Source of the DNA: Mizuhopecten yessoensis
Lineage: Eukaryota
Length of the DNA stretch: 64,000 nucleotides
Direction: 5' to 3'
Assembly (NCBI RefSeq): GCF_002113885.1
Contig: NW_018479894.1
Coordinates: forward strand, 35,707-99,706
Shown: positions 2,829 to 42,210 of the stretch, in pieces
Position numbering within the stretch: position 1 is the first letter of the stretch
Layout: the number at the start of each line of letters is the position of its first letter
Notes under the pieces: generated by a model
Database searches by the model: none
Seen by the model: only the letters and a program-made list of their open reading frames with translations
What the model was told of the DNA's origin: nothing
Program-made: the position numbers and the translations under genes

Positions 2829-5800
2829 CTGAAAAGTAAAAAAAGCAAAAATGATTATCAAGCCATGAAAACAATTTTTGCAATGAAAACACTTATAACA
2901 AACTAGTACAAACACCTAATCAAACTCAACAGAAATAAATGGCTATGTAAGCGAGCAATATTTGATTTAATAGCACTTGATAACTGCACAGTGTTTTGAA
3001 ACACAAATGACAAAATGATATGAAACTGAAGAACATGGACAGCTTATTATATATTTAACCTTCAGAATTGCTTACTGTTATTTGGGATAATTTTGTTGTC
3101 TGTATACATATATTGCAATATAAATTTAAATTGAACGATTACACAACTTACCTGTCATCTCTGCCTCGCGCATCCCCTGGAGGAGTAATGGCAGAATTTT
3201 CTCCTTTCGTAACTTTATCAGGTTGTTGAATATATCTACAACATCTTTGTCATAATCCCATGGTGTGAAGGCAAACTTCATAACAGGCATAAAGGCTGAA
3301 AGCTGCATCCAACGAATATAGAGTTCTGGTTCTGGTTTGGTCAAAGCCAACGTCCCGTTAACTCCATATGTGGTCCCTCCGATAATGTCAGGCACCACAA
3401 ACTGGTAACCAAGGATACCTAGGGTCAAAATGGAGGGTATGACACTTCGCAGTCCGTTTGTATGAGACCAATGAGACTCTTTTCGTGGTGACTTTGTGTA
3501 GACGGGATACTGCTGACTGCGGTACCCACAACTCACCTGTGTAAGACTGCCAGCATTGGGGCTCACCATGGAAATAAACTCGGTCGCAAAGGTTCCAGGG
3601 TTTGCGAGTGATCTAAACGTTTTATGAATTTTGGGTAAAAAATTAGTTTCACATCCATGGAAATTGAACGACTTGATGCCGTAATCTTTGACCATGTTGG
3701 CTAATTGTTCCTTGTACCAAGTGACTGTGGTCTGACGCGTTACATCTATCACACCCATCAGACCGCTGTACCATTTCATCAAGGAAGGACTATGTGCCTG
3801 AATGTCTGACACCAGTAAATCTGCTGCCTTAGTTTTAAATGCTTTTGATTCTACACTCACAAAGGGTGTCATAGAAACAATGACATCAAATTTATATTCT
3901 TTCAAATAACTTACCATTTGATGTGAGTTTCTGAAAGCAGATTCATCAAAATTAAAATCCCCAAATCTTGTAGAATATTTATCATCTATTTCTATAAAAT
4001 TAGCTTGAAGTTTGTAGGGACTAATCTTATCACTGACGTTTTTTGCATGTGCTAATAAGAGTGATTGAGTCAGATTTGGGTTGAATCTGCCCCAGGTAGA
4101 CCACACAACGCCCTGCATTAAACTTTTGTCTGGTAGACCTAATGGCATGTGAAAATATTTCTTCTGTAGCAGTTTGTGTATTTTACTAATGCTGTCCTCC
4201 TTACACACTGTGTACTCCAACACAGGGGTTTTACTGTCTGGGTTTGGGTACGGTGAGTTGGTATAATCGGCGCTAAAACACAGTAAGTTACTTTTACTTT
4301 CATTTATGCTCACAAACAGTGGTACCTCACTGTTGACTACAATACCAACACCATTGGAATTTATCCAAAATCTATCAACAATATTTCCAAACATATTTTT
4401 TCCACTATTTTTCTCAGTGTTTGATCGGAATAAGATGTCGTTTGATAGATAAGGCTGCATAGGAACATCTGTAGTTTCAAGGGGCCAGGTCTGGTGATAG
4501 AGTTCTGCACCACCGTACCAATGGGCACTCCTCAGAGAAAAGCAGTCGTGTGGAATAAAGTCACGACTGGTTGGAGTCCACTTCACATGATGACAGTTGT
4601 CCGTCTTTGAAATCTGAAATAAAGAAACAATCTGATATAAAGTTTATATATAAAAGATATGACTGTTGCTACTGGCTTAAATGTTGGAAGTTTGACTCAT
4701 CATATAACTGTACATATCTGCCTTTTTTCCCCCAAAGACACCAAGTTACCTAAATAGATACCAGCACCCTGGGAAGTAAATTAGGAAAGACCAGTGTCTT
4801 TAAAGCATCCATGTGGTTATACTCTTGAGTTCTTTAATGCTACTGATAGTCTAACACTAAGATAGTCAGATTTCATTTATTATAGGATTCAGCACAAATC
4901 CGAAAAGAAACATGACAGCTCATTGCTTATGAGAAACCCTTAACAATTCCCAAACGAAGATGGATCCAGTTTGCTTACAATGCATTTAGACCTTAAAATA
5001 CACACGATTGTATGCATGTTCAGCATAACACCGATCTGTATAGAGGAGCACTTTGAGGGAAAATTATCGGGTTAGACCAAGATTGTAACCCGGAAGCTCC
5101 AACTCTAGACAGGTGCTCTAATTACCATTGTGACTGAGCATTATACCTGGTCATCAATTCACAATAGACACATGCCCCAGTCTTATATCTATATATCCTG
5201 TTTGCTGACTTGTGATGTCAGTTATTAAAGTATGAACTATAGTATGGAGCACAGATTACTTGTTATGTATTATATGACAAACTGGTTTACTAGTAAGTAA
5301 CTCTATTTTATTGTACTAATGTAATAGAGGTTGTTAATTTCCTGATGTCTCTACTAGAAATCAAACCTAGTCTGACACTCTACTGATTGAGCTGATGAGA
5401 AATTCCACAAGCCAAATTGGTATGGTAGGATACAACTATAGTATTATATCAGGGTGATATATATATACTCCCTTTACAGGAAAAAAAGCATACTTCACTC
5501 GTTTCTATGCCCTTATGATTAACTCATTGCTGCAGACCTACCACAAGCTTGCTGACATCATTTCTGGTTTTTGAGTAGTGAACGTAAACACATATATATA
5601 TATAGCCTCATGTCTGAAAAGACGTCAGAGAAAATGAGAAATATACTCGCAAGTTCATGCTATTTTATTCAATACTTGTAGAGCTTTTCTGCAATTGTTT
5701 TTTTTTAGGTTACAAAAAAATAGAAATAACCTGGGAAATGGAGATATTTTATATAATAATTCCATGCCTCTACATAATCATTTGCTTACAGTATTGTGTG

Positions 5801-8800
5801 ACCGTCATGTGGTCTGGCTCGTACAGCTTTTCTACAGGCAAAACCAAATATAATCATATGTTTTTCATATAAGTTCCTTATTTATTATTTTTAGGTTAGT
5901 AAATACAGGTATATTCCTTCCTTTGCAAAACAGTCTAATGTCAGCAATTTGCTTTTTAATTTTGATGATTAGTTTATTTGGCAAATTTCATCTTAAAGGT
6001 ACAGAAACTAGAGCTAGAAGCTTAATATAACCCAGGTCCCTACATATCCACTATATCGTAAAACGTACTAGCCTTGTCTGTCAATACACCTATGATATGT
6101 ATATTATAGGTGTAACAGACAAGACTACATGTAGTACCTGTGATTGTAACAGGGATCATTATATGTTTACAGTAATCACAGTAATCTTCCATCATTGGAA
6201 ATCTTGATAGAGATTGTTGCGATGCCTCTTCTTTTTGCTTTAATCGTGTTAACTTTAACGCCTTCACTTCCGGTTGCGTGCATGCTTAATATGTAAAATT
6301 AATTTACAGTTTATGCACACGTAATGTTCACTGTTTAATAAAAGGAAGCACTGAATTTCCTGGGATGAGTATTCCAGTGCTTGTTCAGTCGATGCTTGAA
6401 CGAATTGATGTTTTCTGCGGAAACTACTTCCTTTGTAAGGTTGTTCCATGTGTTGACAACTCTGTTGCTGAAGACGTTTGTGCTGATGTTTAATCGGAAT
6501 GCTTTTTTGTAGAGCTTTTTAGAGTGCCCCCTTGTGGGGTTTACTTCTGGTCGTGCAAACCTGTCGGGCCTTAGACGATGTCAATCCCGTTCAGTATTTT
6601 GTATAGTTCTACCATATCTGCACGTTCCCTTCTGTATTCTAGTGTTGGTAGTCCCAATTTCCATAATCTGTTGGTGTATGACATGTCCTTAAGTTGCGGG
6701 ATTCTTTTCGTAGCTCTTCATTGTACGTTTTCATTGGCAATTTTGTCTTTCAACAGCATCGGGGACCAAACTGTGGAGCTATACTCTATATGCGGTCTTA
6801 CCAGTGTCTTGTAAAGGGCAACAAATGTATTGGTATCTTTAAGGGTTATAGTCCTGCAAATTATTCTGAGTATTCTGTTGGCTTTTGACACGGAAATGTT
6901 GGTGTGATCACTGCATGAATTTGAGAGTACTGTCAATCATAACTCCTAGGTCTTTTTCCGTTGTAACTTTGGTAATATTGGTTACTTCCCCTTTATCGGT
7001 TATCTCATAAGTTGATGTTTTCGCTTTGTTCCCTATCTCCATGTGTTTACATTTATCGATGTTGAGCTCCATTAACCAATTTTCTGTCCATTGACATTTC
7101 TTGTCTATGCTGTTTTGCAGTTGTGCTGTATCTTCCGGTTTTGATATTTTTTGGTATAACTTAGTGTCATCAGCAAACATCTTTATAATGCAGTTGACTA
7201 ATTCGGGCATGGCGTTTACGTATATTAGGAACAGCAGCGGACCCAGTACACTCCCCTGGGGTACCCCGCTGCGGACTGGTTGGGGGTTGAATTGCTCACC
7301 ATTAATTACTACCTTCTGTGTCAAGTTTGATAGATAGGCCCTTATCCAATTTAGCACACATCCCTTGACTCCATATAGTTCCAGCTTGTATAGTAGGAGA
7401 CGGTGTGAAACCACATCAAACGCTTTAGCGAAATCTAGGTATATGACGTCTGCATTGTGTCTGAAGTCTATGATTTCCGTCCAATCCTCTATTGATTCCA
7501 ACAGTTGTGTCGTGCAGGAACGTCCCACCCTGAAGCCGTGCTGGCTGTCTGTTATAAGATTGTTATGGTCTAGATGTTGTAGTATGCTATCTCGTACAAT
7601 TCGCTGCATGATTTTGCATGGTACAGATGTTAGGCTTATGGGTCAATAGTTACTTGGGGTTCTTTTTTGATCCTTGGTGATTTGAAGATTGGTGTCACAT
7701 GTGCTTTTTTCCAGCATTCCTTCTTCGAGAGATCTGTTAAAGATTACATCTAGTGGTTCTGCAATCTCGTCGATCGTGTTTACTAACATTCTAGGATGGA
7801 TATTGTCCGGTCCTGACGATTTATTTGGGTTTAGCCGCTTGATTGCCTTCTCAGGCGATATTACAATGTTGTCCAACGCTTCTTCGTATGTCCTTGGGGT
7901 TAGATTTGGTATGTTGGTGTTGCCGTCAGTGACAAATACACTAGCGAAGTAGTTGTTGAGGGTTTCTGCTGTTTCCTTATCATTTGTTGTTAGTGTTCCA
8001 TCAGTTTTTGTCACTTTGTTGATGGTTCTTTGTTTTGGAGTTAACATATTTTCAGAATGCCTTGGGGTTGGTTTTGTGGTGTTTGTTGACGTTCTGTAAG
8101 CGTGCGAATGACTGTGAGTGAAGCATGTGAGTGACCTTGATGGGAGCCTAGTTCGAATTGTTCTTGCATGTGTTTTGTTCCAAGATAAAAAGTACCCAAG
8201 CTGAGATAGCTGTCCAGTGTTCTATATTTGTGAAGCGTATGTGTGCCGACTGTACTGGTACGAATACAACAATGGCGTCACGAGCATTCCCGAGTCTGTT
8301 CGCGGAGGTCATGGATACGCTAGAATCCGAGGAGAATTTCTAGTGGGATTAATACAAGAGACGTAGAATCCCGGGTAGAGGGTGCGCGCCATCTTTGATT
8401 GTCTTTTGTGTGATACACGTGTTTTGTGTTTCACGTTGTCCCAATGTTTATGTTTTGTGTTTAGAGTTGTATCCTGGGTAGAGGGAGCAATTTATTCACA
8501 AATTCATTCGATAGTTGACCCGTGTAGAAGGCCAACTACTGTCTGATACCCTTGCGTGTTTTTAAATAATAAAACAAAAACCAAAAACGAAACAAACGGA
8601 AACGGAACGGTTATCTTAGGACAATAAAAAAATAAAATATTTAGACAACATTTTATTCGTGGTCACGTTGGTTAGGTGCTCTGGTGGCGCTGTACCAATG
8701 GTAACTGATGTTTGATTAATTTAGTTTCAAGTGTATTCAGTGAGGTAGGTGTTCTGTTGACGCCAGGCTGCTCTGAATATCTATATATATATTTATTAAT

Positions 8801-11800
8801 TTTTTTTTGCTCGCTGTGGTAGGTGTTCTGTTTGACGCTAACCCTCGAGTATTATTTATATTAAAACCACAGCTAGGGTGTCGGTTGTTTTTCTCTTACT
8901 GTTCTAATATGCAGTGTGGTGGGTGGTAATTACCGCTACCCCTGTTTAATAGAAATAAATTTTGTAAAAGGATTTGGGTATATTTTTTTTTTTTTTTTCT
9001 CTTGTTGTTTCTGTGTTAACAGATCTAGATGAACAAGCGGTATGCAGGGGTACTGATCGCAGATTCAAGAGCAAATAATTTTCAAAGATTTGGTCATCCA
9101 GAGGATTTCAACATCAAATTTATAATTCAGAGAGGCGCACAAATTCAGGACCTGGTGGCATTATCAATTCCAATCGTTCGGACATTTGAACCATCAAAAA
9201 CTTTAATAATAAAAGTTGCTGCTGGCATTAATGATTTGTTAAAATTGGAACGGGAGCCAGATGGGAAAATTCTAGTACCGTCAGACAGGTCACCGGACAA
9301 TATTATTGAAGAACTTTCAGAATTTAGAACACGTGTACAGGTAGTTAGACCATCAAGCCGAGTTAGTTTCATCACCATCCCTCCTGCTTCGTTAAAAGAC
9401 TTTCAACTTAATAAATCCTCCAAACCAATTAACCAAAATCTGGTAACAAAATTACAAGAACAACACAATAAAACTGTGTTGGAGGTAAATTCTAGAATTC
9501 ACCATTTAAATAACCAGACAGTGCCAACGGGTTGGACAGTTAAGTGGGCAGATACCATTGTTCACAAACACAAGAAAAGGAGAGGCCGTGCACGGAAAGT
9601 GATTACCGCTTACCGGTATTCCTTTGAACAGTATTACGATGGCTTACATGCCAAATCTGATGTAAAGAAAGAGTGGTACAAACAGGTGGTTTCTGGAATT
9701 CGAGGGGATATTACCAAATTGGAAAAACCAGGAAGTGAGATTCGAATTGTCACCACAGAATCTTCAGAAGAGGACACTCCGGTAGACACTGACGATAAAA
9801 GTTGGAAGAGACTTAAACGGTAATTGTAATACGGCAGCGGGTTGGTGATCTGTTGTCGCCTTATCCCCTGCACCGTAGAACTCTTAAACGATAAGTTGAG
9901 GTTGTGGGTTGGTGATCTGTTGTCGCCTTATCCCCTGCCACAATGACTCGTATAAATTACTGTGAGAGACAAGACCTACTACTATTGCCGGGTATTGGAG
10001 AGCGTCTGGCGGACAAAATTCTACAAGTCCGTGAAGTAATGGGGGACATTACTAAAGAGGTTCTGTTGGCCATTCCATACCTGAGGCCCACAGAGACCAT
10101 GTTAAACCAAATAGACTTTACACCGCGATATGAACGGTTTACTGACATGGGTGAGAACTTGACGGGTGAGCATCACACCTACAAAATGGACCCACCACCA
10201 AAGGTTCAACATCCTTCACCACCACGACTACAAGTTCAAAATCCAGGACCGTATTTTGACAATTATGGGTATCCTGGCAGCCGCCAGAGAGAACATCGAC
10301 AGCAGTACCAGTACACTAATTACCGAGACCCATACGAACAGGAATACCACGGTCAGCCCCGTCAACCACAGTTCAACTTTCCACCTCCAAGGTACAATCC
10401 GGGGAATCCGCCGCCAAGACGTGGACGGGTGGTAGCTCCCAAGACGTTACGCTATGATGGAAACTCCGATTGGAAAGCTTTTTGCACAAAGTTTACTAGA
10501 TTCACTGAGGCGGAGAATCTTACTGCTCGTGAATGTCGGGATAACCTTTGCTGGATACTGGAGGGCAAAGCTAGTGAGTTTTTCACTATGCTCTTGGATC
10601 GTGATTCAACGATGGAATTTTTCGATATCATGTCAAAAATGGAACGCCGTTTTGGATTCAAGGAGCTGGCCGAGACTACCCAAGCACGCCTTCGTAACGC
10701 CCGACAGTACCCTGACGAGAAGCTAGCAGATTGGGCTGATCGGGTGTTATCTTTAGCTACCAGAGCCTATCAGGATCTGCCCGATGAGTTTATGTATAAA
10801 CAAGCGATCTCCACAATTTGCCAGGGAGCAGCAGATAAAGAAGCAGGCCAATATGTTTCTAACCTAAGATTGGGATCTATTGAGGAAGTGGTGGACAAGA
10901 TGAGACTTTTTCAACATACAAGAAAGTCTATCTATGGTCGCGACCGTCCTAGACCTTCGCCTGTCGAAGAACTAATCATACAAGAGGAAGAAGGTACTAG
11001 TGTCAGCAGGACATTCCAGCGTAGAGTCCCAAATTCTCAGTCCTCATTCCAGCCATCTTCAGCAACAAACCAAAGGCTGTCAGCCCTAGAAGACAAGGTA
11101 TCGGACATGCAAAAATCCCTTAAACAAATTTTGGAGGCTGTTCGTGTCCCAGAGGAAAGGATCAAAAGGAATGTGGTTTGTTATGGTTGTGGCCAGACAG
11201 GCCATTTTAAGTCGAACTGTCCTAATGCTGAAGATAATAAATCTGTGAAACTCCTGGATGCGGCTGAAAAGACTGAAGGTGAAGAAGTAGTCCCTGGATC
11301 TGAAGAAGTTGAGGACTCGTTAAACACCGACAGGTCGGCCAACTAGACCTAAGCCCGACCTTAGATGTTAAAAATGGTCTTCATCCTACACGGTCAACAA
11401 TTACACCAGATGACCTTATCAGTGAGGTAATGACTGATAACACCACCGAATCAACCCGTGTTGAACTTGATAATATTACCCGATTACGGTCAACATCCAT
11501 GTTTCAAGTGCCTGTTATCGTGGGAGGTTTTCATACAAGAGCAGTGGTGGATACCGGTGCTGAAGTATCAATCATATCGGATGAGGTATACAAAAACCTT
11601 GTTGAGCCACCCTCGATATTGAAACATGTGACACTTAATGCAGCAGGCAGAGATCAACCAATTGAGAGCTATATTGTTGGACCCATCGAACTAGATATAG
11701 GATCTAAGAGTTACAAGGTTAGCATTTATGTTGGACCAATTGAAGATGATATCTTGCTGGGTCTGGACTTTCTGAAGCCCAATAATGCTCAACTTGACAT

Positions 11801-14800
11801 TTCAGGGGATACTCTTACCCTGGGTATTGGTGGAGAGAAAATTTCAGTGAACACAGGAAAAGAATTTTTACCTGCTTCCGAAGGCAAGGTATATGTACAG
11901 AAACGGACTGTAGTACCACCGAACAGTGTAGCAAGAGTGTGTTGTCGAATTTCCGGAAAGGTAGGCAGTTCTAGTCTAATTGTGGAGCCTACAGTAGAAA
12001 ATGGACTACTAATTCCGAGATCATTGTATGACACAGCCTCGCAGATCAGGTTGTACTGTGTGAATGTCACGGACAGAAATATAATTCTGAAAAGGAAAAC
12101 GGAAATTGCGATAGTCAATGAGGCAAGAGAAATTATTGCGAATGTTGAAAGTCATGCGGATCCCATATTTGTGGAGACATTACGCTGTGGCGAGGAAACA
12201 CCGGACATTGCGCCTTCGCATGTACAGAGTCTCATTGATGGCGCGAAAGAACAGTTGTCGGTTGAGGAGTTAAGTCAATTTGCTCAACTTATTAAGGATA
12301 ATTCCGATGTTTTTGCGAAAAATGACTTTGACCTGGGACATTTTAGTGCTATCAAACACAATATTGATACAGGTACGGCACGGCCGATAAAGCAACGTTT
12401 TCGCAGAACGCCAGCATGTTTTGCCAACGAAGAGGATTTGCATCTAAAGAAGATGCTAGATTCTGGAGTTATCGAATCCTCTACATCCGAGTGGGCGTCA
12501 GCACCAGTGCTGATCCGTAAACGTGACGGCGGAGTGCGCTGGTGCATAGATTATCGGGGACTGAACTCGGTAACTACTAAAGACGTGTTTCCATTACCGT
12601 TAATAGAAGAATGCCTCGACGCATTGACCGATAACGTGTGGTTTTCGAAACTAGATGCCAACTCGGCTTATTGGCAAGTCCTTGTCAATGAATCGGACAG
12701 ACATAAGACTGCCTTCAGTACAAAACACGGATTGTTTCAGTTTGTCAAAATGGGATTCGGACTTTGTAACGCCCCAGCAACTTATGCCAGAGTAATGAAC
12801 CTGGTTCTTCGTGGATTAACATGGAACATTGTTCTTGCCTTCCTGGACGATGTGTTGGTTCTTGGGAAGACCTTCGATGAGCATCTCCAAAATCTAGCAG
12901 AAGTCTTTGAGCGCATCAGGGCGTATCAACTGAAACTCAAACCCGCTAAGTGCGAATTCTTTAAAAAGAAGGTTGACTTCTTAGGGCGAACAGTTAGTGA
13001 AAGTGGCATTGAAACCAGTGGCAAACACATCGAAAAGATGAAGGAGTGGCCAACACCAACATCATCTAAGGATGTTGAGCAATTCTTGGGGTTTGCCAAC
13101 TACCATCGCTCATTTATTCCCGAATATGCCAAAATTGCAGCTCCTCTGTACCAATTGACAGGAAAGAATGACTTTCGGTGGGATGAGGAACAGGAAAAAG
13201 CATTTTCCAGCTTAAAATCTTCCCTGAGTTCTCCACCTGTTTTGGGAATACCGAATAACAGCGATATGTTTGTGCTCGACACAGACGCATCTGACTTTGC
13301 TATTGGTGGTGAGTTGTGCCAAATTCAAGAAGGCAAGGAAAGAACAATAGCTTATGCTAGTTATTCCCTGACATCAGAACAGCGTCGCTATTGTACAACA
13401 AGAAAAGAACTTTTGGCAGTAGTTCGCTTTACCAGACAGTTTCGCCATTATCTGCTTGGTCGCAAGTTTGTGGTGAGAACTGATCACAACAGTTTGGTTT
13501 GGTTGCTCAACTTCAAAAATCCCCAAGGACAACTGGCGAGATGGCTTGAAGAGTTAAGCCAGTATGATCTAACTATTGTACACCGAAAAGGAAAAGACCA
13601 TCAAAATGCTGACAGTCTCTCCCGGAGTCTACCAAAAGACCAGTGCGGAAACTTGAAACATGGGCAAGATCCTACCACGTTACCATGCGGAGGATGTGCC
13701 TATTGTACTCGGGCTCATGAACATTGGCATCAGTTTATCTCTGATGTGGACGAGGCGGTCTCTCTAAGTAACATACCCTGCGTACAAAAAGTAACCCAGT
13801 CTGACAATACTTTCGCCGTGGAAGGAAGTCTATATAGCGAGAATTTGACCATAGAAGTGTCTGCTTTTGGAATAAATATCCTCACTAGATCTGAAAGGAG
13901 TGATATTGAAGACATGAACGTCAACGCCTTGGATATTCAATTCTCGGGTTACTCGGCAAAGGAAATCCGGACTGCTCAGGAGCAAGATCCAGAGTTATCT
14001 ATACTGCTAGAGTGGGTAAAGAATAAGAAAGAGGTGGACGAAGGAGAACTGTTTGGATCCAGTAGAGCCATAAAGTATTACTGGATTAACCGTGAGTTAT
14101 ACTTCCTGGATGAGTCTGGTATATTGTGGAGGAAGGATCTAGAAGACACTAGCAAAACTCAATCCTTGGTTATACCTCCCAGTATGAGAGAAGACGCTAT
14201 TTCTTTGTGCCATGACATCCCGGCTAGCGCTCATCAGGGAATCAACCGAACAGAATCCATGGTTCGCCAGAGGTTCCATTGGTATGGCTTGCCTCGCGAC
14301 GTTCAAAAGTTCGTGAAATCCTGTGTCATCTGCAACACCAAGAAAAAAGCCAGTCGAAAGGCTCGATGCCCGTTGACTCTTTTCCAATCAGGGGAACCCA
14401 TGGAAAGAGTTCATCTTGACTTCTTGGGCCCACTACCCATAACAGCAACAGGAAATGAACACATATTAGTTATGGTAGACCAGTTTACCAAATGGGTTGA
14501 ATGTGTTCCCTTACCTTCGCAGACCGCCGCGACAACCGCAAAAGCAGCTGTAAACGAATTCTTCGCGAGATTTGGATATCCGTTCCAAATTCATACAGAC
14601 CAAGGTAGAAACTTTGAAAGTCGTCTGTTTAAAGCTTTGTGTGAAGTTACGCAAATTCATAAAACTCGTACAACGGCTTATAGACCTTCTGCCAATGGAC
14701 AAGTGGAGAGGTATAATCGCACCATCATGAACGCAGTTCGATGCTTCATAAACTCTCAAAGTGAATGGGACATCTATTTACCACAGCTAGCTGGCGCGCT

Positions 14801-16466
14801 AAGGTGTTCCGTAAACCGCCAAACTGGACATACCGCCAACAAGTTAATGCTGGGCCGGGAGACCAATCAGCCTGCAGATCTCTTGTATGCCGCTCCATCG
14901 AACAAGAAGGCGAAGGACTCTCGCGACTCTGAAAGTTATGTGGACAATTTGGTAGATGCAATTCAGCGTGCCCATGAAACCGCCAGAAAAACCCTTGCCA
15001 CAACGCAGAGGAGAATGAAACGTGATTACGATGTTCGCGTTTACACTACCGAGTTCATTGAAGGGGATGTGGTCTACGTCTTCGACAATGCAACGCCTAA
15101 GGGACAAAATCCCAAGTTAAAGGCCGTTTGGAAAGGTCCTGGACTCATAGTCAAAAAGTACACGCCGTACGTCTATGGAGTACAGATGGGGAAGACGCGA
15201 CAAGTCATTAATCACGATCGATTAAAAATGTGTAATGACCGTAAGCGACCCCAATGGATAATCGATCTCCAGGAGCACCGAGCGGAACCGGTAGAGGAAA
15301 CCCACTGTGTCTGCCATCAAACGGATGATGGGACCATCATGATCCAGTGTGACTTTTGTTTTGTGTGGTTCCATGGACGTTGTGTGGGCTTAAATGTAGA
15401 GGAAGCCGAACAGCTGGAACTTTATTGCTGTACTACGTGTGAACTATCTGTATAAGTGTGAACTGACTCCACAGTATACAGGGACTTCTATAAAAGAGGG
15501 AGGAATGTGGTGTTTGTTGACGTTCTGTAAGCGTGCGAATGACTGTGAGTGAAGCATGTGAGTGACCTTGATGGGAGCCTAGTTCGAATTGTTCTTGCAT
15601 GTGTTTTGTTCCAAGATAAAAAGTACCCAAGCTGAGATAGCTGTCCAGTGTTCTATATTTGTGAAGCGTATGTGTGCCGACTGTACTGGTACGAATACAA
15701 CAGTTTTAATAAGGATCACACCAGCGAGATGTCTGGCTTACTATCAATAAAGCTTAAGAGAAATTATCCTTTACTGAGTTGTTAGAAGACAGCTAGCTTA
15801 TTTCACTATGGTGACAGAGATATATGTCACTAGAATTATGTAAAATAATCAAGGGAGATAACTCACAATATCAGAAATAATATTTTGGCATACAAAGATT
15901 AAGATACATTTCAAACAGGTATAGATCTATACAGTCATTTAGTTTTGTTGAAGGGAAGATCATGATTTCTCCTATATATTAGGATTTGGTAAATTGCTCT
16001 ATCCTTTCACAAAAAAAGCCCCAAAACCTAACAGTAATGAAGCTTGTGAAATCAGATTGTAAAACCTGATCGCAAACATTTGGTTCCGGTTTACCTCTAG
16101 TTTGGCGTATCTAAGCCAGTGGAGACACATGCTCGTGGCTTTGTTCTGGTCTGATTTACAAGCCACCGTAAAGGTGGATCTGAGAGTTTCGGAGACGATG
16201 CCCTGAAGGTATGTGCTTTTGCCACTGTTGTACACAAAAATTCCTGTGGAAAAATCATATTGGAGGTCTCCAACCCTCTGCTCCACCACTCCACTGGCGT
16301 ATAGAGGTGTCACTTTCTTCTTCAGAGCGCTCACTGTGTACCAGATAATAAACACCATGAAGAGAAGAAAACAAGCTATCTTCAAAAATCTCAACGTTCT
16401 GCCGCGAAGTTGCCTCATAGTCAAACTTGTTGTATCGCAGCTCATCACATAACAAACATACCGCAT
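2563..16466 (-). CDS. MYORG: MYORG (myogenesis-regulating glycosidase, KIAA1161)-like GH31 type II membrane protein, 3 exons, 699 aa; catalytic residues apparently lost
   Basis: join of 16466-16095, 4613-3152 and 2828-2563 = 2100 nt, with GT-AG introns in phases 0 and 1. N-terminal TM segment (FLKIACFLLFMVFIIWYTV). MYORG-type motifs HWYGGAE, WSTW, IEIDD, PDIIGG, ELYIRWMQLSAFMP, PIIRPIWW, EFLVGDSILVAP, RDIYLPEG. Confidence 0.9.
3152..4613 (-). CDS. MYORG: MYORG-like exon 2 (GH31 barrel)
   Basis: Acceptor TTTCAG|ATT at 4613, in frame with the 486-aa ORF; donor ACAG|GTAAGT at 3151. Confidence 0.93.
5065..5155 (-). mobile_element. Degenerate tRNA-derived SINE head
   Basis: Resembles the SINE heads at 17068-17165 and 17380-17495. 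Confidence 0.35.
6345..8074 (-). mobile_element. 5'-truncated, frameshifted CR1/L2-group LINE (ORF2 RT and C-terminus)
   Basis: Broken frames give KTNPKAF*KYVNSK, KSSGPDNIHP, QHGFRVGRSC, YLDFAKAFD, GVPQGSVLGP, MFADDTK, LVRPHIEY, TRGHSKKLYK, FSNRVVNTWNNL and SFKHRLNKHW. Confidence 0.9.
8075..8271 (+). repeat. 5' LTR (197 bp)
   Basis: TGTGGTG...TACAACA, identical to 15506-15702 by eye. Confidence 0.97.
8273..8286 (+). other. Primer binding site, probably tRNA-Ser (CGA-type)
   Basis: TGGCGTCACGAGCA 1 nt after the LTR; complementary to a tRNA ending ...CGTGACG-CCA, the 3' end I recall for a metazoan tRNA-Ser(CGA). Confidence 0.75.
9029..9823 (+). CDS. Gypsy accessory ORF0: SGNH/GDSL-like hydrolase (264 aa)
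   Basis: SGNH blocks in order: I VLIADS, II RGA, III AAGINDL, V YDGLH. Basic insert HKHKKRRGRARK and an acidic/basic tail. Confidence 0.8.
   Translation: MNKRYAGVLIADSRANNFQRFGHPEDFNIKFIIQRGAQIQDLVALSIPIVRTFEPSKTLIIKVAAGINDLLKLEREPDGKILVPSDRSPDNIIEELSEFRTRVQVVRPSSRVSFITIPPASLKDFQLNKSSKPINQNLVTKLQEQHNKTVLEVNSRIHHLNNQTVPTGWTVKWADTIVHKHKKRRGRARKVITAYRYSFEQYYDGLHAKSDVKKEWYKQVVSGIRGDITKLEKPGSEIRIVTTESSEEDTPVDTDDKSWKRLKR
9943..11346 (+). CDS. gag: Gypsy Gag (467 aa): N-terminal helix-hairpin-helix, Pro/Gln-rich linker, capsid, coiled coil, CCHC zinc knuckle
   Basis: INYCERQDLLLLPGIGERLADKILQVR (HhH); PKTLRYDGNSDWKAF (capsid start); CYGCGQTGHFKSNC (zinc knuckle). Confidence 0.92.
   Translation: MTRINYCERQDLLLLPGIGERLADKILQVREVMGDITKEVLLAIPYLRPTETMLNQIDFTPRYERFTDMGENLTGEHHTYKMDPPPKVQHPSPPRLQVQNPGPYFDNYGYPGSRQREHRQQYQYTNYRDPYEQEYHGQPRQPQFNFPPPRYNPGNPPPRRGRVVAPKTLRYDGNSDWKAFCTKFTRFTEAENLTARECRDNLCWILEGKASEFFTMLLDRDSTMEFFDIMSKMERRFGFKELAETTQARLRNARQYPDEKLADWADRVLSLATRAYQDLPDEFMYKQAISTICQGAADKEAGQYVSNLRLGSIEEVVDKMRLFQHTRKSIYGRDRPRPSPVEELIIQEEEGTSVSRTFQRRVPNSQSSFQPSSATNQRLSALEDKVSDMQKSLKQILEAVRVPEERIKRNVVCYGCGQTGHFKSNCPNAEDNKSVKLLDAAEKTEGEEVVPGSEEVEDSLNTDRSAN
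11319..11361 (+). promoter_or_regulatory. -1 programmed ribosomal frameshift signal (gag to pol)
   Basis: G TTA AAC slippery heptamer in the gag frame at 11319-11325; 6-nt spacer; 7-bp stem AGGTCGG (11332-11338) / CCGACCT (11355-11361). The -1 frame is open from the heptamer into pol. Confidence 0.8.
11430..15455 (+). CDS. pol: Gypsy Pol: protease, RT, RNase H, integrase, C-terminal PHD finger (probably entered by frameshift near 11325)
   Basis: VDTGA; RWCIDYRGLN; FGLCNAP; AFLDD; LDTDAS; RTDH; HDIPASAH...CVIC; HLDF, HTDQGRNFES, NGQVER; WKGP; C-x-C...QCDFCFVWFHGRCV...CTTC. Confidence 0.97.
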   Translation: MTDNTTESTRVELDNITRLRSTSMFQVPVIVGGFHTRAVVDTGAEVSIISDEVYKNLVEPPSILKHVTLNAAGRDQPIESYIVGPIELDIGSKSYKVSIYVGPIEDDILLGLDFLKPNNAQLDISGDTLTLGIGGEKISVNTGKEFLPASEGKVYVQKRTVVPPNSVARVCCRISGKVGSSSLIVEPTVENGLLIPRSLYDTASQIRLYCVNVTDRNIILKRKTEIAIVNEAREIIANVESHADPIFVETLRCGEETPDIAPSHVQSLIDGAKEQLSVEELSQFAQLIKDNSDVFAKNDFDLGHFSAIKHNIDTGTARPIKQRFRRTPACFANEEDLHLKKMLDSGVIESSTSEWASAPVLIRKRDGGVRWCIDYRGLNSVTTKDVFPLPLIEECLDALTDNVWFSKLDANSAYWQVLVNESDRHKTAFSTKHGLFQFVKMGFGLCNAPATYARVMNLVLRGLTWNIVLAFLDDVLVLGKTFDEHLQNLAEVFERIRAYQLKLKPAKCEFFKKKVDFLGRTVSESGIETSGKHIEKMKEWPTPTSSKDVEQFLGFANYHRSFIPEYAKIAAPLYQLTGKNDFRWDEEQEKAFSSLKSSLSSPPVLGIPNNSDMFVLDTDASDFAIGGELCQIQEGKERTIAYASYSLTSEQRRYCTTRKELLAVVRFTRQFRHYLLGRKFVVRTDHNSLVWLLNFKNPQGQLARWLEELSQYDLTIVHRKGKDHQNADSLSRSLPKDQCGNLKHGQDPTTLPCGGCAYCTRAHEHWHQFISDVDEAVSLSNIPCVQKVTQSDNTFAVEGSLYSENLTIEVSAFGINILTRSERSDIEDMNVNALDIQFSGYSAKEIRTAQEQDPELSILLEWVKNKKEVDEGELFGSSRAIKYYWINRELYFLDESGILWRKDLEDTSKTQSLVIPPSMREDAISLCHDIPASAHQGINRTESMVRQRFHWYGLPRDVQKFVKSCVICNTKKKASRKARCPLTLFQSGEPMERVHLDFLGPLPITATGNEHILVMVDQFTKWVECVPLPSQTAATTAKAAVNEFFARFGYPFQIHTDQGRNFESRLFKALCEVTQIHKTRTTAYRPSANGQVERYNRTIMNAVRCFINSQSEWDIYLPQLAGALRCSVNRQTGHTANKLMLGRETNQPADLLYAAPSNKKAKDSRDSESYVDNLVDAIQRAHETARKTLATTQRRMKRDYDVRVYTTEFIEGDVVYVFDNATPKGQNPKLKAVWKGPGLIVKKYTPYVYGVQMGKTRQVINHDRLKMCNDRKRPQWIIDLQEHRAEPVEETHCVCHQTDDGTIMIQCDFCFVWFHGRCVGLNVEEAEQLELYCCTTCELSV
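15492..15505 (+). other. Polypurine tract
   Basis: AAAAGAGGGAGGAA directly before the 3' LTR. Confidence 0.9.
15506..15702 (+). repeat. 3' LTR (197 bp)
   Basis: Identical to the 5' LTR; followed by TSD GTTT. Confidence 0.97.
16095..16466 (-). CDS. MYORG: MYORG-like exon 1 (cytoplasmic tail, TM helix, start of luminal domain)
   Basis: ATG at 16466; donor CTAGAG|GTAAAC at 16094; phase 0. Confidence 0.8.
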
Positions 16467-40589: not shown

Positions 40590-42210
40590 AAAGATATTAG
40601 AAATACAAACCCAAAAGCCCCTGGACCTGACGGACTCCCGAACATTGTATTAAAGGAGTGCGCACCCCAACTTGCACCTGGAGTCTCTATGATATTCCAG
40701 AGGTCACTGGACACGGGAATACTCCCCCAGGACTGGCTGAATGCAAACGTGGCCCCTGTGTTCAAGAAGGGAGATCGTCATGCACCAGAGAACTACCGTC
40801 CTGTATCGTTGACCTCTGTTCTCAGCAAGATCCTCGAACACATAGTCTGTCATCATTTGCTTAACCACTTTGACCAGCGCGCAATGCTGTCACCTCTCAA
40901 TCATGGCTTCCGTGCTGGTTATTCATGTGAAACCCAGCTTGCTGTCACCATACACGACCTTGTTTCCAACTTTGACGAAGGTTCACAGACCGACATCGCC
41001 ATATTGGACTTCTCTAAGGAATTCGATACGGTGCCCCATAGGAGGTTGCTGCATAAGCTGGACTCGTACGGCGTACGTGGTAATCTTCATTGATGGATCA
41101 GTTCATTTCTCTGCCAAAGGCACATGAAAGTAGTAGTGGAAGGTGAATCCTCAAGAGAAGTCCCTGTTGCCTCCGGAGTACCCCAGGGAACAGTCCTAGG
41201 CCCTCTATTATTTCTGTGCCACATCAACGACTTACCTGATGCCGTCAAGTCTCAAGTACGCCTATTCGCAGACGACTGCCTGCTATACAGGATCATACGC
41301 AACCACCAGGACCATATCACCCTCCAGCAAGACCTAAAAAATCTTGAGTTCTGGGCCGAGCAGTGGGGCATGCGGTTCAATGCCAGCAAGTGTTACATCC
41401 TAACCATCAAGCAGAAGTCATCTTACTACTACCAACTGAATAACACTATCCTCAAAGGAGTTCCGACTAGCCCCTACCTTGGTATCACAATCTTGTCTGA
41501 TCTCCGATGGGGAATCCACATCGACAAAATCTGTAAAAAAGCTAGTTCTACCCTAGGCTTTATTAGGCGGAACCTCTACCACTGCTCAGCCAAAACACGG
41601 AAATCGGCCTACATCTCGCTTGTCAGATCAACACTGGAATATGGAGCCATCATATGGGACCCATTCCTACAGTCGGATATTGACAAGCTGGAGAGGATTC
41701 AAAGGAAGGCTGCTCGATTCATCTCACGCGACCACAGAACAAGAACACCTGGATGCGTTGCCAACATGCTCAGGGACTTGGACCTGCTAACATTACAACA
41801 ACGCAGAAAGGAGCTACGTCTGACCTTCCTGTTCAAGGTGGTGGAGGGGTTGGTATCGGCTATACCACCTAAGCCCTATTTAAAACCAGTGAGAATTAAA
41901 CGCAAAGTGACAGCAAGGCATTTTAACAGCTTTATCTCAACAAACGTCGTTGAAAATAGTGTTACAAACAATAGCCGCTGTTTTCAAACTATTGCTGCAA
42001 AAACAGAAACACTGAGGAACTCTTATTTCCCCAGGACTATTATAGACTGGAACCATCTTCAGGACGAACAAGTCCTTGTGAAATCTGTGGAGATTTTCAA
42101 ATCTCGTCTCCATTCGGATTAAAAACCCCTATGCGCTCTTCCCTCCCGTTGATTATATGCCAGAAGTGGTTTTTCAACGTACAGATACAGATACAGACAG
42201 ATACAGATAA
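40590..42210 (+). mobile_element. 5'-truncated CR1-group LINE; ORF2 RT with one in-frame TGA at 41091-41093; (ACAGAT)n tail
   Basis: KAPGPDG, NYRPVSLTS, HGFR, LDFSKEFD, GVPQGTVLGP, LFADD, YFPRTIIDWN. The two ORFs share a frame. Microsatellite tail at 42181-42208. Confidence 0.93.

What the first reader, a model, noticed from the sequence alone, without database searches (positions are those of the whole stretch)
8075..15702. Three non-standard modules in one young element: SGNH ORF0, HhH-Gag and integrase-PHD
Seen: short 197-bp LTRs, a leader of about 750 nt, three intact ORFs, RT with FLDD rather than YxDD, and a small CGGCAYCTRAH motif between RNase H and integrase. Inference: together these could define an uncharacterised Gypsy system that couples DNA binding (HhH), histone reading (PHD) and an esterase, possibly for targeted integration.
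Basis: partly seen in the sequence, partly recalled or inferred. Interest (0 to 1): 0.8.

Follow-up and report, generated by a model that had tools for sequence, protein, structure and literature searches.

The report
Young Gypsy retrotransposon with three add-ons
This is an intact, recently inserted Gypsy-type retrotransposon that carries an esterase gene before gag, a DNA-binding motif on Gag and a histone-reader finger on its integrase; all three add-ons are real, but related elements carry them in different combinations, so they are not one coupled system.

Summary
The element spans 8075-15702 and has identical 197-nt LTRs, a 4-bp target duplication, a 757-nt leader and three intact ORFs.

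- **ORF0** has no Pfam hit but is an SGNH/GDSL-fold hydrolase. The Ser, Gly, Asn and Asp-x-x-His blocks are conserved, and every top fold match is an SGNH esterase. Its family is unnamed and large (797 clusters at 50% identity).
- **Gag** starts with a ComEA-type helix-hairpin-helix motif. 18 of 35 Gag relatives hit Pfam HHH_3.
- **Pol** runs PR-RT-RH-IN and ends in a PHD finger that most resembles the PHF2, CFP1 and BPTF fingers.
- **FLDD and the four-cysteine motif** are shared by the whole clade.

The "one coupled system" reading fails. SGNH ORF0 also sits before gag in distant Gypsy lineages that lack the Gag motif and the PHD finger. The nearest sister elements keep both of those, lack ORF0 and carry a TatD-DNase ORF after pol.

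Esterases and PHD fingers are already reported in retroelements. I found no report of HhH-Gag, of an esterase placed 5' of gag, or of the TatD ORF. Verdict: a new variant of a known kind, of moderate interest. The proposed functions are inferred, not tested.

The parts
8071..8074 (.). target-site duplication GTTT, 5' copy
   Evidence: Read directly from the sequence; it matches 15703-15706.
8075..8271 (+). 5' LTR, 197 nt, TG..CA ends
   Evidence: 100% identical to the 3' LTR.
8273..8285 (+). PBS-like TGGCGTCACGAGC, 1 nt after the LTR; the tRNA was not identified
   Evidence: Read from the sequence. No tRNA gene lies in the window.
8272..9028 (+). 757-nt leader with 7 upstream ATGs, four copies of the hairpin motif and two splice-acceptor-like pyrimidine tracts
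8675..8936 (+). four leader copies of a 5-bp-stem hairpin (GGTG-N / N'-CGC, loop YCUGNNN): 8675-8690, 8748-8763, 8822-8838, 8922-8936
   Evidence: The covariation test is.
9029..9823 (+). ORF0, 264 aa, SGNH/GDSL-fold hydrolase (Ser13, Gly36, Asn68, Asp204, His207); no signal peptide or transmembrane segment is apparent
9844..9926 (+). two more hairpin copies in the ORF0-gag spacer (9844-9859, 9911-9926), within a 33-nt exact direct repeat; the motif after the last hairpin (33-nt repeat, ends 9938) stops 5 nt before the gag ATG
9943..11346 (+). gag, 467 aa: HhH, a Pro/Gln/Tyr-rich linker, a capsid domain and a CCHC knuckle
9952..10056 (+). N-terminal helix-hairpin-helix motif (ComEA/HHH_3 type, LPGIG signature)
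   Evidence: Pfam E=0.002 in this copy. 18 of 35 relatives hit HHH_3, best E=1.4e-9. Weak matches to ComEA and Pol lambda.
10489..10818 (+). capsid-like domain (Retrotrans_gag / PNMA)
11176..11226 (+). CCHC zinc knuckle (nucleocapsid)
11319..11361 (+). candidate -1 frameshift site: G_TTA_AAC, a 6-nt spacer, then a stem (11332-11338 pairing with 11355-11361). The pol frame is open from 11313.
   Evidence: The same heptamer type sits in frame in L007, L009, L010 and L012. The downstream fold is not significant on its own.
11430..15455 (+). pol, 1341 aa from the first ATG: PR-RT-RH-IN-PHD
11511..11777 (+). aspartic protease (DTGA)
12513..12992 (+). reverse transcriptase; FLDD at 12840-12851
13179..13565 (+). 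RNase H
13644..13760 (+). conserved four-cysteine block (C-x13-CGGC-x2-C, then a W/F-bearing helix); it contains CGGCAYCTRAH (13686-13718)
   Evidence: Invariant Cys, Trp and Phe in 8 clade members. No Pfam hit. The AF2 model has low confidence.
14172..14687 (+). integrase: H2C2 zinc finger (14172-14348) and catalytic core (14394-14687)
15135..15227 (+). integrase C-terminal SH3-like domain (Integrase_p58_C, below cut-off)
15306..15440 (+). PHD finger (C4HC3) at the extreme C-terminus of integrase
   Evidence: Pfam 28.5 bits, above the cut-off of 24. Best PDB matches are PHF2 (1.4e-11), CFP1, PHF8 and BPTF.
15492..15505 (+). polypurine tract
15506..15702 (+). 3' LTR
15703..15706 (.). target-site duplication GTTT, 3' copy

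Best explanation
The feature is a complete, very recently inserted, apparently autonomous Ty3/Gypsy LTR retrotransposon of 7,628 bp. Its relatives come from molluscs.

**Shown by the sequence**
- Identical LTRs, a target-site duplication, a PBS and a PPT.
- Three intact ORFs, with pol in the order PR-RT-RH-IN.
- Three extra modules: an SGNH hydrolase ORF0, an HhH motif at the Gag N-terminus and a PHD finger at the integrase C-terminus.
- A [G/T]TTAAAC site in the gag-pol overlap that is conserved across relatives.

**Inferred mechanism**
- Gag-Pol is made by -1 frameshifting at that site.
- The PHD finger sits where chromoviruses carry a chromodomain. It probably tethers the integration complex to histone H3 tails, most likely of the H3K4-methyl type, and so biases target choice.
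- The HhH motif gives Gag sequence-independent nucleic-acid binding, possibly holding particles or cDNA on chromatin.
- ORF0 is an active acyl-esterase made as a separate soluble protein. By analogy with the ORF1 esterase of CR1/L2 LINEs, it probably acts on lipids or membranes during particle assembly or transport, not in integration.
- ORF0 lies upstream of gag, so gag-pol expression needs splicing or internal initiation. The hairpin repeated before ORF0 and before gag probably belongs to that control or to RNA packaging.

The modules are independent accessories that Gypsy lineages shuffle. They are not one co-adapted system.
For: **Structure and youth**
- Element anatomy.
- CpG o/e is 0.82 in the element against 0.45-0.54 in the flanks.

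**Domains**
- Domain order from Pfam.
- SGNH: blocks ADSRA, RGA, GIND and DGLH in 12 homologues. Ser13, Gly205 and His207 are invariant across 92 diverse members. The AF2 model has pLDDT 75.6, and all top-50 PDB and phage matches are SGNH/GDSL enzymes. 6 of 92 members hit Lipase_GDSL and 3 of 92 hit Lipase_GDSL_2.
- HhH.
- PHD.

**Frameshift site:** in the gag frame in 5 elements.

**Modularity**
- Contexts of relatives.
- hmmsearch finds no ORF0 homologue in L009-L012.
- Pol tree.

**Hairpin:** 100% of cells paired; the closing pair occurs as AU, GC, UA and CG; 1 of 500 shuffles reaches the observed score.

**Functional analogies from papers**
- The ZfL2-1 esterase is active and binds phospholipids (PMC3905857).
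- Chromodomain targeting and PHD fingers in retroelements (PMC6673714; bioRxiv 10.1101/2021.11.30.470311).
Against: - No function was tested.
- In this copy the first aromatic-cage position of the PHD finger is His. Relatives, PHF2 and CFP1 have Tyr there, so methyl-lysine reading may be weakened.
- HHH_3 is below Pfam's cut-off in this copy.
- The stem after the slippery site is no more stable than shuffled sequence (z = -0.55).
- Only one insertion site is available, and it lies in repeat-rich DNA. That says nothing about targeting.
- The sample of relatives is small (about 15 loci), and the branch separating ORF0-bearing from ORF0-less elements has weak support (74/84).
- The host species is not known.
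Confidence: 0.75

Rival explanations
1. One reading: the esterase, the HhH motif and the PHD finger form one co-adapted system that together directs integration.
For: All three occur together in two elements from different samples, the window and L007. Their pol cores are 68% identical and their ORF0s 43%.
Against: - ORF0 occurs without HhH or PHD in L006, L001, L004, L005, L013 and L017.
- HhH and PHD occur without ORF0 in L009-L011.
- HhH occurs alone in L012.
- Documented retroelement esterases are linked to lipids, not DNA (PMC3905857).
Confidence: 0.08
2. ORF0 is a passenger: a host gene fragment picked up by this element, with no role in its life cycle.
For: - ORF0 differs in composition from gag and pol (GC3 0.34 against 0.43).
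- It has no Pfam family.
Against: - It holds the same position, directly 5' of gag, in eight elements from at least three Gypsy lineages.
- The family has 797 clusters.
- Catalytic residues are invariant across 92 members.
- The ORF is intact in a copy with identical LTRs.
Confidence: 0.05
3. ORF0 serves cell exit or entry, like the receptor-destroying SGNH esterases of some enveloped viruses. That would make the element retrovirus-like and infectious.
For: - SGNH fold.
- Such roles were raised for bdelloid GDSL ORFs (PMC5408684).
- Horizontal spread of bivalve retrotransposons is cited in PMC6238403.
Against: - The catalytic Ser is at residue 13, so there is no room for a signal peptide. No transmembrane segment is apparent.
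- There is no env-like ORF: pol ends 50 nt before the 3' LTR.
- The PPxY motif in Gag is not conserved.
Confidence: 0.07
4. The PHD finger is not a histone reader here. It could serve as a structural zinc module or bind another partner.
For: - Two of the four cage positions differ from PHF2 in this copy (His and Asp in place of two Tyr).
- No binding data exist.
Against: - Relatives keep a Tyr/Asp/Met/Trp pattern identical to CFP1's.
- All the top PDB matches are fingers that I know as H3K4me3 readers (my own knowledge).
- The domain sits where chromoviruses carry a chromodomain.
Confidence: 0.2

Closest known systems
Vesta LTR retrotransposons of bdelloid rotifers, with a GDSL esterase ORF3 (Rodriguez et al. 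2017, PMC5408684)
   Same: An LTR retrotransposon with a separate SGNH/GDSL ORF. Catalytic residues are intact and there is no transmembrane domain. That paper also describes accessory ORFs being exchanged between lineages.
   Different: In Vesta the esterase lies 3' of pol; here it lies 5' of gag. The lineage and the host phylum differ. Vesta has no PHD finger and no HhH motif. Whether the two esterases are related in sequence was not tested.
ORF1p esterase of CR1/L2/RTEX non-LTR retrotransposons (ZfL2-1; PMC3905857, PMC4120745)
   Same: An SGNH esterase encoded upstream of the polymerase ORF. PHD fingers also occur in ORF1 of the same LINE groups, so esterase and PHD recur in retroelements.
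   Different: Those are non-LTR elements. Their esterase replaces a Gag-like protein and carries a coiled coil. Here it is an extra ORF beside a full Gag. The ZfL2-1 structure was not among the top 50 fold matches.
Chromoviruses (Gypsy elements with a chromodomain at the integrase C-terminus)
   Same: A chromatin-reader domain fused to the C-terminus of integrase, after the SH3-like domain. A targeting role is demonstrated for the chromodomain (cited in PMC6673714).
   Different: The domain here is a PHD finger, not a chromodomain. The likely ligand is an H3K4-type mark of active chromatin, not H3K9me heterochromatin.
Ngaro tyrosine-recombinase retrotransposons with an SGNH ORF (PMC9210276)
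   Same: A retroelement with an extra SGNH hydrolase ORF of unproven function.
   Different: A different class of element: tyrosine recombinase and split direct repeats. The ORF lies after the recombinase.
Retrotransposon-PHD fusions in cnidarians and other eukaryotes (bioRxiv 10.1101/2021.11.30.470311; PMC6673714)
   Same: PHD readers captured by retrotransposons, with H3K4me-type fingers proposed.
   Different: Those fingers are reported as PYGO-like. This one is closest to PHF2, CFP1 and PHF8. The host is probably a mollusc. The combination with HhH-Gag and ORF0 is not described there.

Membership tests
Ty3/Gypsy LTR retrotransposon (Metaviridae) | Direct LTRs with TG..CA ends and a short target-site duplication | tested here: met
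   197-nt identical LTRs and a 4-bp GTTT duplication.
Ty3/Gypsy LTR retrotransposon (Metaviridae) | Pol domain order PR-RT-RH-IN, with integrase after RT | tested here: met
   Pfam coordinates: PR 28-116, RT 362-521, RH 584-712, IN 915-1086.
Ty3/Gypsy LTR retrotransposon (Metaviridae) | Gag with a capsid domain and a CCHC knuckle; a PBS next to the 5' LTR and a PPT next to the 3' LTR | tested here: met
Named Gypsy clades (Mag A/B/C, CsRN1, MolGy1-16 and others) | RT/RH/IN phylogenetic placement with reference elements | not testable with these tools
   No reference set (GyDB, Repbase, MolGy) could be fetched. Only a tree of retrieved relatives was built.
Chromovirus | Chromodomain at the integrase C-terminus | tested here: not met
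   No chromodomain hit. A PHD finger occupies that position.
Errantivirus / env-bearing Gypsy | An env-like ORF 3' of pol | tested here: not met
   Pol stops at 15455 and the 3' LTR starts at 15506. No ORF lies between them.
SGNH/GDSL hydrolase superfamily (ORF0) | Conserved blocks I (Ser), II (Gly), III (Asn) and V (Asp-x-x-His) | tested here: met
   The motifs ADS13RA, RG36A, GIN68D and D204GLH207 are present. Ser13, Gly205 and His207 are invariant in 92 sequences. Asp12, Gly36, Gly66 and Asp204 are conserved at 90% or more.
SGNH/GDSL hydrolase superfamily (ORF0) | Three-layer alpha/beta/alpha fold | tested here: met
   AF2 pLDDT 75.6. All top-50 PDB matches are SGNH enzymes, with TM-scores up to 0.49 (query) and 0.64 (target). 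The phage library gives the same result.
SGNH/GDSL hydrolase superfamily (ORF0) | Sequence match to a curated family model | tested here: inconclusive
   This copy has no Pfam hit. Among family members, 6 of 92 hit Lipase_GDSL and 3 of 92 hit Lipase_GDSL_2, weakly. PDB sequence searches were blank.
SGNH/GDSL hydrolase superfamily (ORF0) | Esterase activity | not testable with these tools
   Needs an enzyme assay.
PHD finger | C4HC3 zinc-binding signature and a model score above cut-off | tested here: met
   PF00628 scores 28.5 bits against a cut-off of 24. PHF2 PHD matches at E=1.4e-11.
H3K4me3-reading PHD subclass | Aromatic cage (PHF2 Tyr7, Tyr14, Met20, Trp29, numbering from my own knowledge) | tested here: inconclusive
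   This copy has His, Asp, Met, Trp. Relatives have Tyr, Asp/Ala/Trp, Met, Trp, which matches the CFP1 pattern.
Helix-hairpin-helix, ComEA/HHH_3 type (Gag N-terminus) | Hydrophobic-Pro-Gly-Ile/Val-Gly hairpin between two helices and a model score above cut-off | tested here: inconclusive
   LPGIG is present. This copy scores 18.6 bits, below the cut-off of 27. Relatives exceed it (L011 30.8 bits), and 18 of 35 hit HHH_3, best E=1.4e-9. The feature is met for the family and sub-threshold for this copy.

The most novel reading that the evidence does not exclude
The unnamed SGNH ORF0 may be an old, widespread and functionally required accessory gene of marine-invertebrate Gypsy elements. It would be a convergent counterpart of the LINE ORF1 esterase, pointing to a general lipid or membrane step in retrotransposition. 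On this reading the clade seen here also uses a CFP1/PHF2-like PHD finger to steer integration toward H3K4-methylated chromatin and an HhH-Gag to hold on to DNA. Sister elements would replace the esterase with a TatD nuclease. That would be a natural swap experiment in accessory enzymes.
Probability: 0.25. Interest if true: 0.7.

Novelty: new variant of a known kind. Interest (0 to 1): 0.5.

Why it matters
Retroelements of four classes (LINE, Ngaro, Penelope-like, LTR) have each acquired SGNH esterases, and nobody knows why. This finding adds three things:
- a large unnamed esterase family (797 clusters at 50% identity) in a fixed position before gag;
- an intact, young copy that is suitable for experiments;
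- close relatives that lack the esterase or carry a nuclease instead, which can serve as comparators.

The PHD finger sits where chromoviruses have a chromodomain. That gives a testable case of integration aimed at active rather than silent chromatin. An HhH motif on a Gag protein, and a TatD nuclease inside an LTR element, did not turn up in the searchable literature.

Tried and rejected
- **ORF0 sequence searches:** Pfam gave only a spurious Filo_VP24 hit. PDB sequence searches with the single protein and with the 92-member profile gave nothing meaningful. Only the fold search and conserved motifs resolved it.
- **Same-length ORF elsewhere:** the 264-aa ORF at 49375-50169 is unrelated; it is a tandem-repeat artefact.
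- **RNA and tRNA scans:** Rfam over the element found no credible family. No tRNA gene in the window could identify the PBS partner.
- **Frameshift stimulator:** the fold is not better than shuffled sequence.
- **Cys motif:** the AF2 model had low confidence (pLDDT 61), so I ran no fold search on it. Pfam was blank.
- **PPxY late-domain idea for Gag:** the motif is not conserved.
- **Locus searches:** The metagenome scan gave only six loci.
- **Distant ORF0 relatives:** their contexts were on contigs too short to help.
- **Exact-sequence look-up:** the window's own three proteins are not in the 15-billion-protein collection, so I could not count copies.
- **Papers:** Kapitonov and Jurka 2003 is not held.
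- **Clade placement:** I could not place the element among reference Gypsy clades because no reference sequences were available.
Full report
**1. What is there**

The window holds one copy of a 7,628-bp element at 8075-15702.
- Two 197-nt direct repeats, 8075-8271 and 15506-15702, are 100% identical. They begin with TG and end with CA, and GTTT flanks them on both sides (8071-8074, 15703-15706).
- A TGG-initiated PBS-like sequence starts one base after the 5' LTR. A 14-nt purine run touches the 3' LTR.
- Between the LTRs lie a 757-nt leader and three intact ORFs: 9029-9823 (264 aa), 9943-11346 (467 aa) and 11430-15455 (1341 aa).
- CpG observed/expected is 0.82 inside the element and 0.45-0.54 in the flanks.

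Identical LTRs, intact ORFs and undecayed CpG all indicate a very recent insertion. The two N bases of the window lie outside the element.

**2. Pol and Gag**

Pfam gives protease, RT, RNase H, the integrase H2C2 finger, the integrase core, a sub-threshold p58-type SH3 and a terminal PHD finger, in that order. That is the Gypsy order. No ORF lies between pol and the 3' LTR, so there is no env.

Gag has a capsid domain (Retrotrans_gag/PNMA), one CCHC knuckle and a sub-threshold HHH_3 match at residues 4-38.

Pol is in the -1 frame relative to gag and is open from 11313, which gives a 31-nt overlap.
- The heptamer G_TTA_AAC lies in that overlap, in the gag frame (11319-11325).
- Six bases later comes a 6-7-bp stem.
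- L007, L009 and L010 have T_TTA_AAC, and L012 has G_TTA_AAC, at the equivalent place and in frame.

I infer Gag-Pol synthesis by -1 frameshifting. The stem alone is not statistically distinctive.

**3. ORF0 is an SGNH hydrolase**

A word search found 11 unnamed homologues, one of them from the sea cucumber Holothuria leucospilota.
- Their alignment shows the four SGNH blocks: ADS13RA, RG36A, GIN68D and D204GLH207.
- An AlphaFold model built on that alignment (pLDDT 75.6) matches only SGNH/GDSL enzymes among the top 50 PDB hits. These include PAF acetylhydrolase, sialate O-acetylesterase, isoamyl-acetate esterase and PatB. The viral library likewise returns mainly phage esterases and hydrolases.
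- A profile search of 1.84 billion representatives found 797 relatives at E<=1e-3 and 64 at E<=1e-30. Nearly all are stand-alone proteins of 230-290 aa.
- In 92 diverse members, Ser13, Gly205 and His207 are invariant. Asp12, Gly36, Gly66 and Asp204 are conserved at 90% or more.
- Six members weakly hit Lipase_GDSL and three hit Lipase_GDSL_2.

The catalytic Ser is at residue 13, so there is no signal peptide.

**4. HhH-Gag**

The N-terminus carries the LPGIG hairpin signature and weakly matches ComEA and the Pol lambda HhH.
- Among 35 Gag relatives, 18 hit HHH_3 (best E=1.4e-9) and 12 hit HHH.
- L011 exceeds Pfam's cut-off.
- The named relatives are nearly all from Mytilus mussels. Two sit in symbiont MAG bins (Thiodiazotropha, Sedimenticola) and are probably host contamination.

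The host of the window is therefore probably a mollusc, but that is not proven.

**5. The PHD finger**

It scores above Pfam's cut-off. Its best matches in the PDB are PHF2 (1.4e-11), CFP1, PHF8/KDM7, BPTF, DIDO1, ING2, Spp1 and TAF3. From my own knowledge these are H3K4me3 readers.

Using PHF2 numbering (also from my own knowledge), the cage positions are His7, Asp14, Met20 and Trp29 in this copy. Relatives have Tyr7 with Asp, Ala or Trp at position 14, plus Met20 and Trp29, which matches the CFP1 pattern. Histone reading is thus plausible for the family and a little less certain for this copy.

The finger sits after the SH3-like domain, where chromoviruses have their chromodomain.

**6. FLDD and the Cys motif are clade characters**

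The motif VLAFLDD is shared by the window, L007, L009-L012 and P0045. The distant ORF0-bearing elements have YLDD (L006) and YIDD (L001). Tyr to Phe is a conservative change, and I attach no functional meaning to it.

- It is present in all eight clade members and absent from L006 and L001.
- The His is not invariant (His, Asp or Asn), so a four-cysteine zinc site is the likelier reading.
- Pfam has nothing for it, and the structure model is too weak to use.

**7. Do the modules travel together? No**

| Element(s) | SGNH ORF0 | Gag type | PHD on IN | Other |
|---|---|---|---|---|
| window, L007/L008 | yes | HhH | yes (L008 pol cut off by the contig end) | - |
| L006 | yes | Ty3-type, no HhH | no | - |
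| L013 | yes | CCHC Gag, no HhH hit | no | - |
| L001, L004, L005, L017 | yes | DUF7041 | no in L001; pol is fragmentary in the rest | - |
| L009, L010, L011 | no | HhH | yes | TatD-DNase ORF 3' of pol |
| L012 | no | HhH | no | - |

- In L010 the TatD ORF lies inside 260-nt LTRs.
- An HMM of ORF0 finds nothing in L009-L012.
- In every one of the eight ORF0 contexts the order is ORF0, gag, pol.
- A pol tree puts all ORF0 bearers on one side of a weakly supported branch (74/84). That fits one loss followed by a TatD gain, but nine taxa cannot settle it.
- ORF0's GC3 (0.34) differs from that of gag and pol (0.43).

**8. A repeated RNA hairpin**

A motif occurs six times in this element, on the + strand only. 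It has a GGTG-N / N'-CGC stem and a 6-8-nt loop, usually reading YCUGNNN.
- Four copies are in the leader and two in the ORF0-gag spacer. The motif that follows the last hairpin ends 5 nt before the gag ATG.
- L007 has one copy before ORF0 and one before gag.
- All 40 cells pair. The closing pair appears as AU, GC, UA and CG. One of 500 shuffles reaches the observed score.
- Several copies are preceded by YCAG and pyrimidine tracts that look like splice acceptors. The clearest are at 8885-8914 and 8983-9022.

ORF0 and seven upstream ATGs stand between the cap and gag, so some special route to gag-pol translation is needed. Splicing, internal initiation and a packaging role for the YCUG loops are all open. 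I recall that retroviral CCHC knuckles bind UCUG, but I did not check this.

**9. Comparison with the literature**

SGNH esterases are known in:
- CR1/L2/RTEX LINE ORF1, where the enzyme is active and binds phospholipids (PMC3905857), and where PHD fingers also occur in the same groups (PMC4120745);
- Ngaro elements (PMC9210276);
- bdelloid Vesta LTR elements and Athena elements, as ORF3 (PMC5408684).

PHD fingers in retrotransposons are described as widespread (PMC6673714), and fusions are catalogued in cnidarians (bioRxiv 10.1101/2021.11.30.470311). The survey of mollusc LTR elements defines 21 Gypsy clades but does not describe accessory domains (PMC6238403).

Searches for helix-hairpin-helix with gag and LTR retrotransposon, and for TatD with LTR retrotransposon, found nothing relevant. 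The library holds open-access papers only, so absence there is weak evidence.

**10. Verdict**

This is a new variant of a known kind. Interest is moderate. It rests mainly on three things:
- the large unnamed esterase family with a fixed position before gag;
- the natural esterase/nuclease swap among close relatives;
- an intact young copy for experiments.

**Limits**
- I could not place the element among reference Gypsy clades.
- I could not identify the host.
- I have no copy count and no expression data.

Noticed in passing
window 8675-8936 and 9844-9926; L007 93-108 and 997-1012: A small hairpin (5-bp stem, YCUG-type loop) is repeated before ORF0 and before gag. Its closing base pair covaries. 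It occurs only in the ORF0-bearing members of the clade.
   Followed up: yes
L009 7244-9466; L010 11794-13551 (inside LTRs 1503-1762 / 13901-14160); L011 10502-12853: Sister Gypsy elements carry a long ORF 3' of pol that ends in a TatD-family DNase domain (E down to 2e-35). No report of TatD in LTR retrotransposons turned up in the searchable literature.
   Followed up: partly
window 8885-8914 and 8983-9022: Two long pyrimidine tracts ending in CAG/AG lie just upstream of a hairpin copy and of the ORF0 ATG. They look like 3' splice sites. GTAGGT donor-like sequences lie inside the leader hairpin repeats (for example 8745-8750).
   Followed up: no
window 9029-9823 (ORF0 residues 179-190 and 258-264): ORF0 has a conserved basic insert (Lys/Arg-rich, with a near-invariant Arg184). 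In the longer family members it also has a conserved C-terminal Trp-Lys-Arg-x-Lys tail. These could be nuclear-localisation or lipid/RNA-binding elements.
   Followed up: no
protein P0039 (Mytilus galloprovincialis Gag relative): One Gag relative carries a Tpt1/KptA RNA 2'-phosphotransferase domain (E=2.3e-8). This is another accessory enzyme in the same Gag family.
   Followed up: no
proteins P0014 and P0016: Two Gag relatives are deposited under bacterial MAG names (Candidatus Thiodiazotropha, Sedimenticola). They are most likely bivalve host DNA binned with symbiont genomes.
   Followed up: no
window 6908-7609 (-) and 41124-42122 (+): Two other reverse-transcriptase fragments lie in the window. 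The first is just upstream of the insertion site, so the element landed in repeat-rich DNA.
   Followed up: partly
window 3126-4586 (-): A 486-aa ORF with a glycosyl-hydrolase family 31 domain (E=1.7e-25). It is probably host coding sequence.
   Followed up: no
window 49375-50169 (-): A 264-aa ORF made of about 10-residue tandem repeats. It has the same length as ORF0 by coincidence and is unrelated to it.
   Followed up: yes
window 55791-58194 (-): Three overlapping long ORFs in different frames lie in a stretch with very high AT skew (0.65). There is no Pfam hit. It is probably low-complexity sequence.
   Followed up: no
window 8075-15702 versus its flanks: CpG observed/expected is 0.82 in the element and 0.45-0.54 in the flanking DNA. 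This fits a CpG-depleted (methylated) host genome and a very young insertion.
   Followed up: partly
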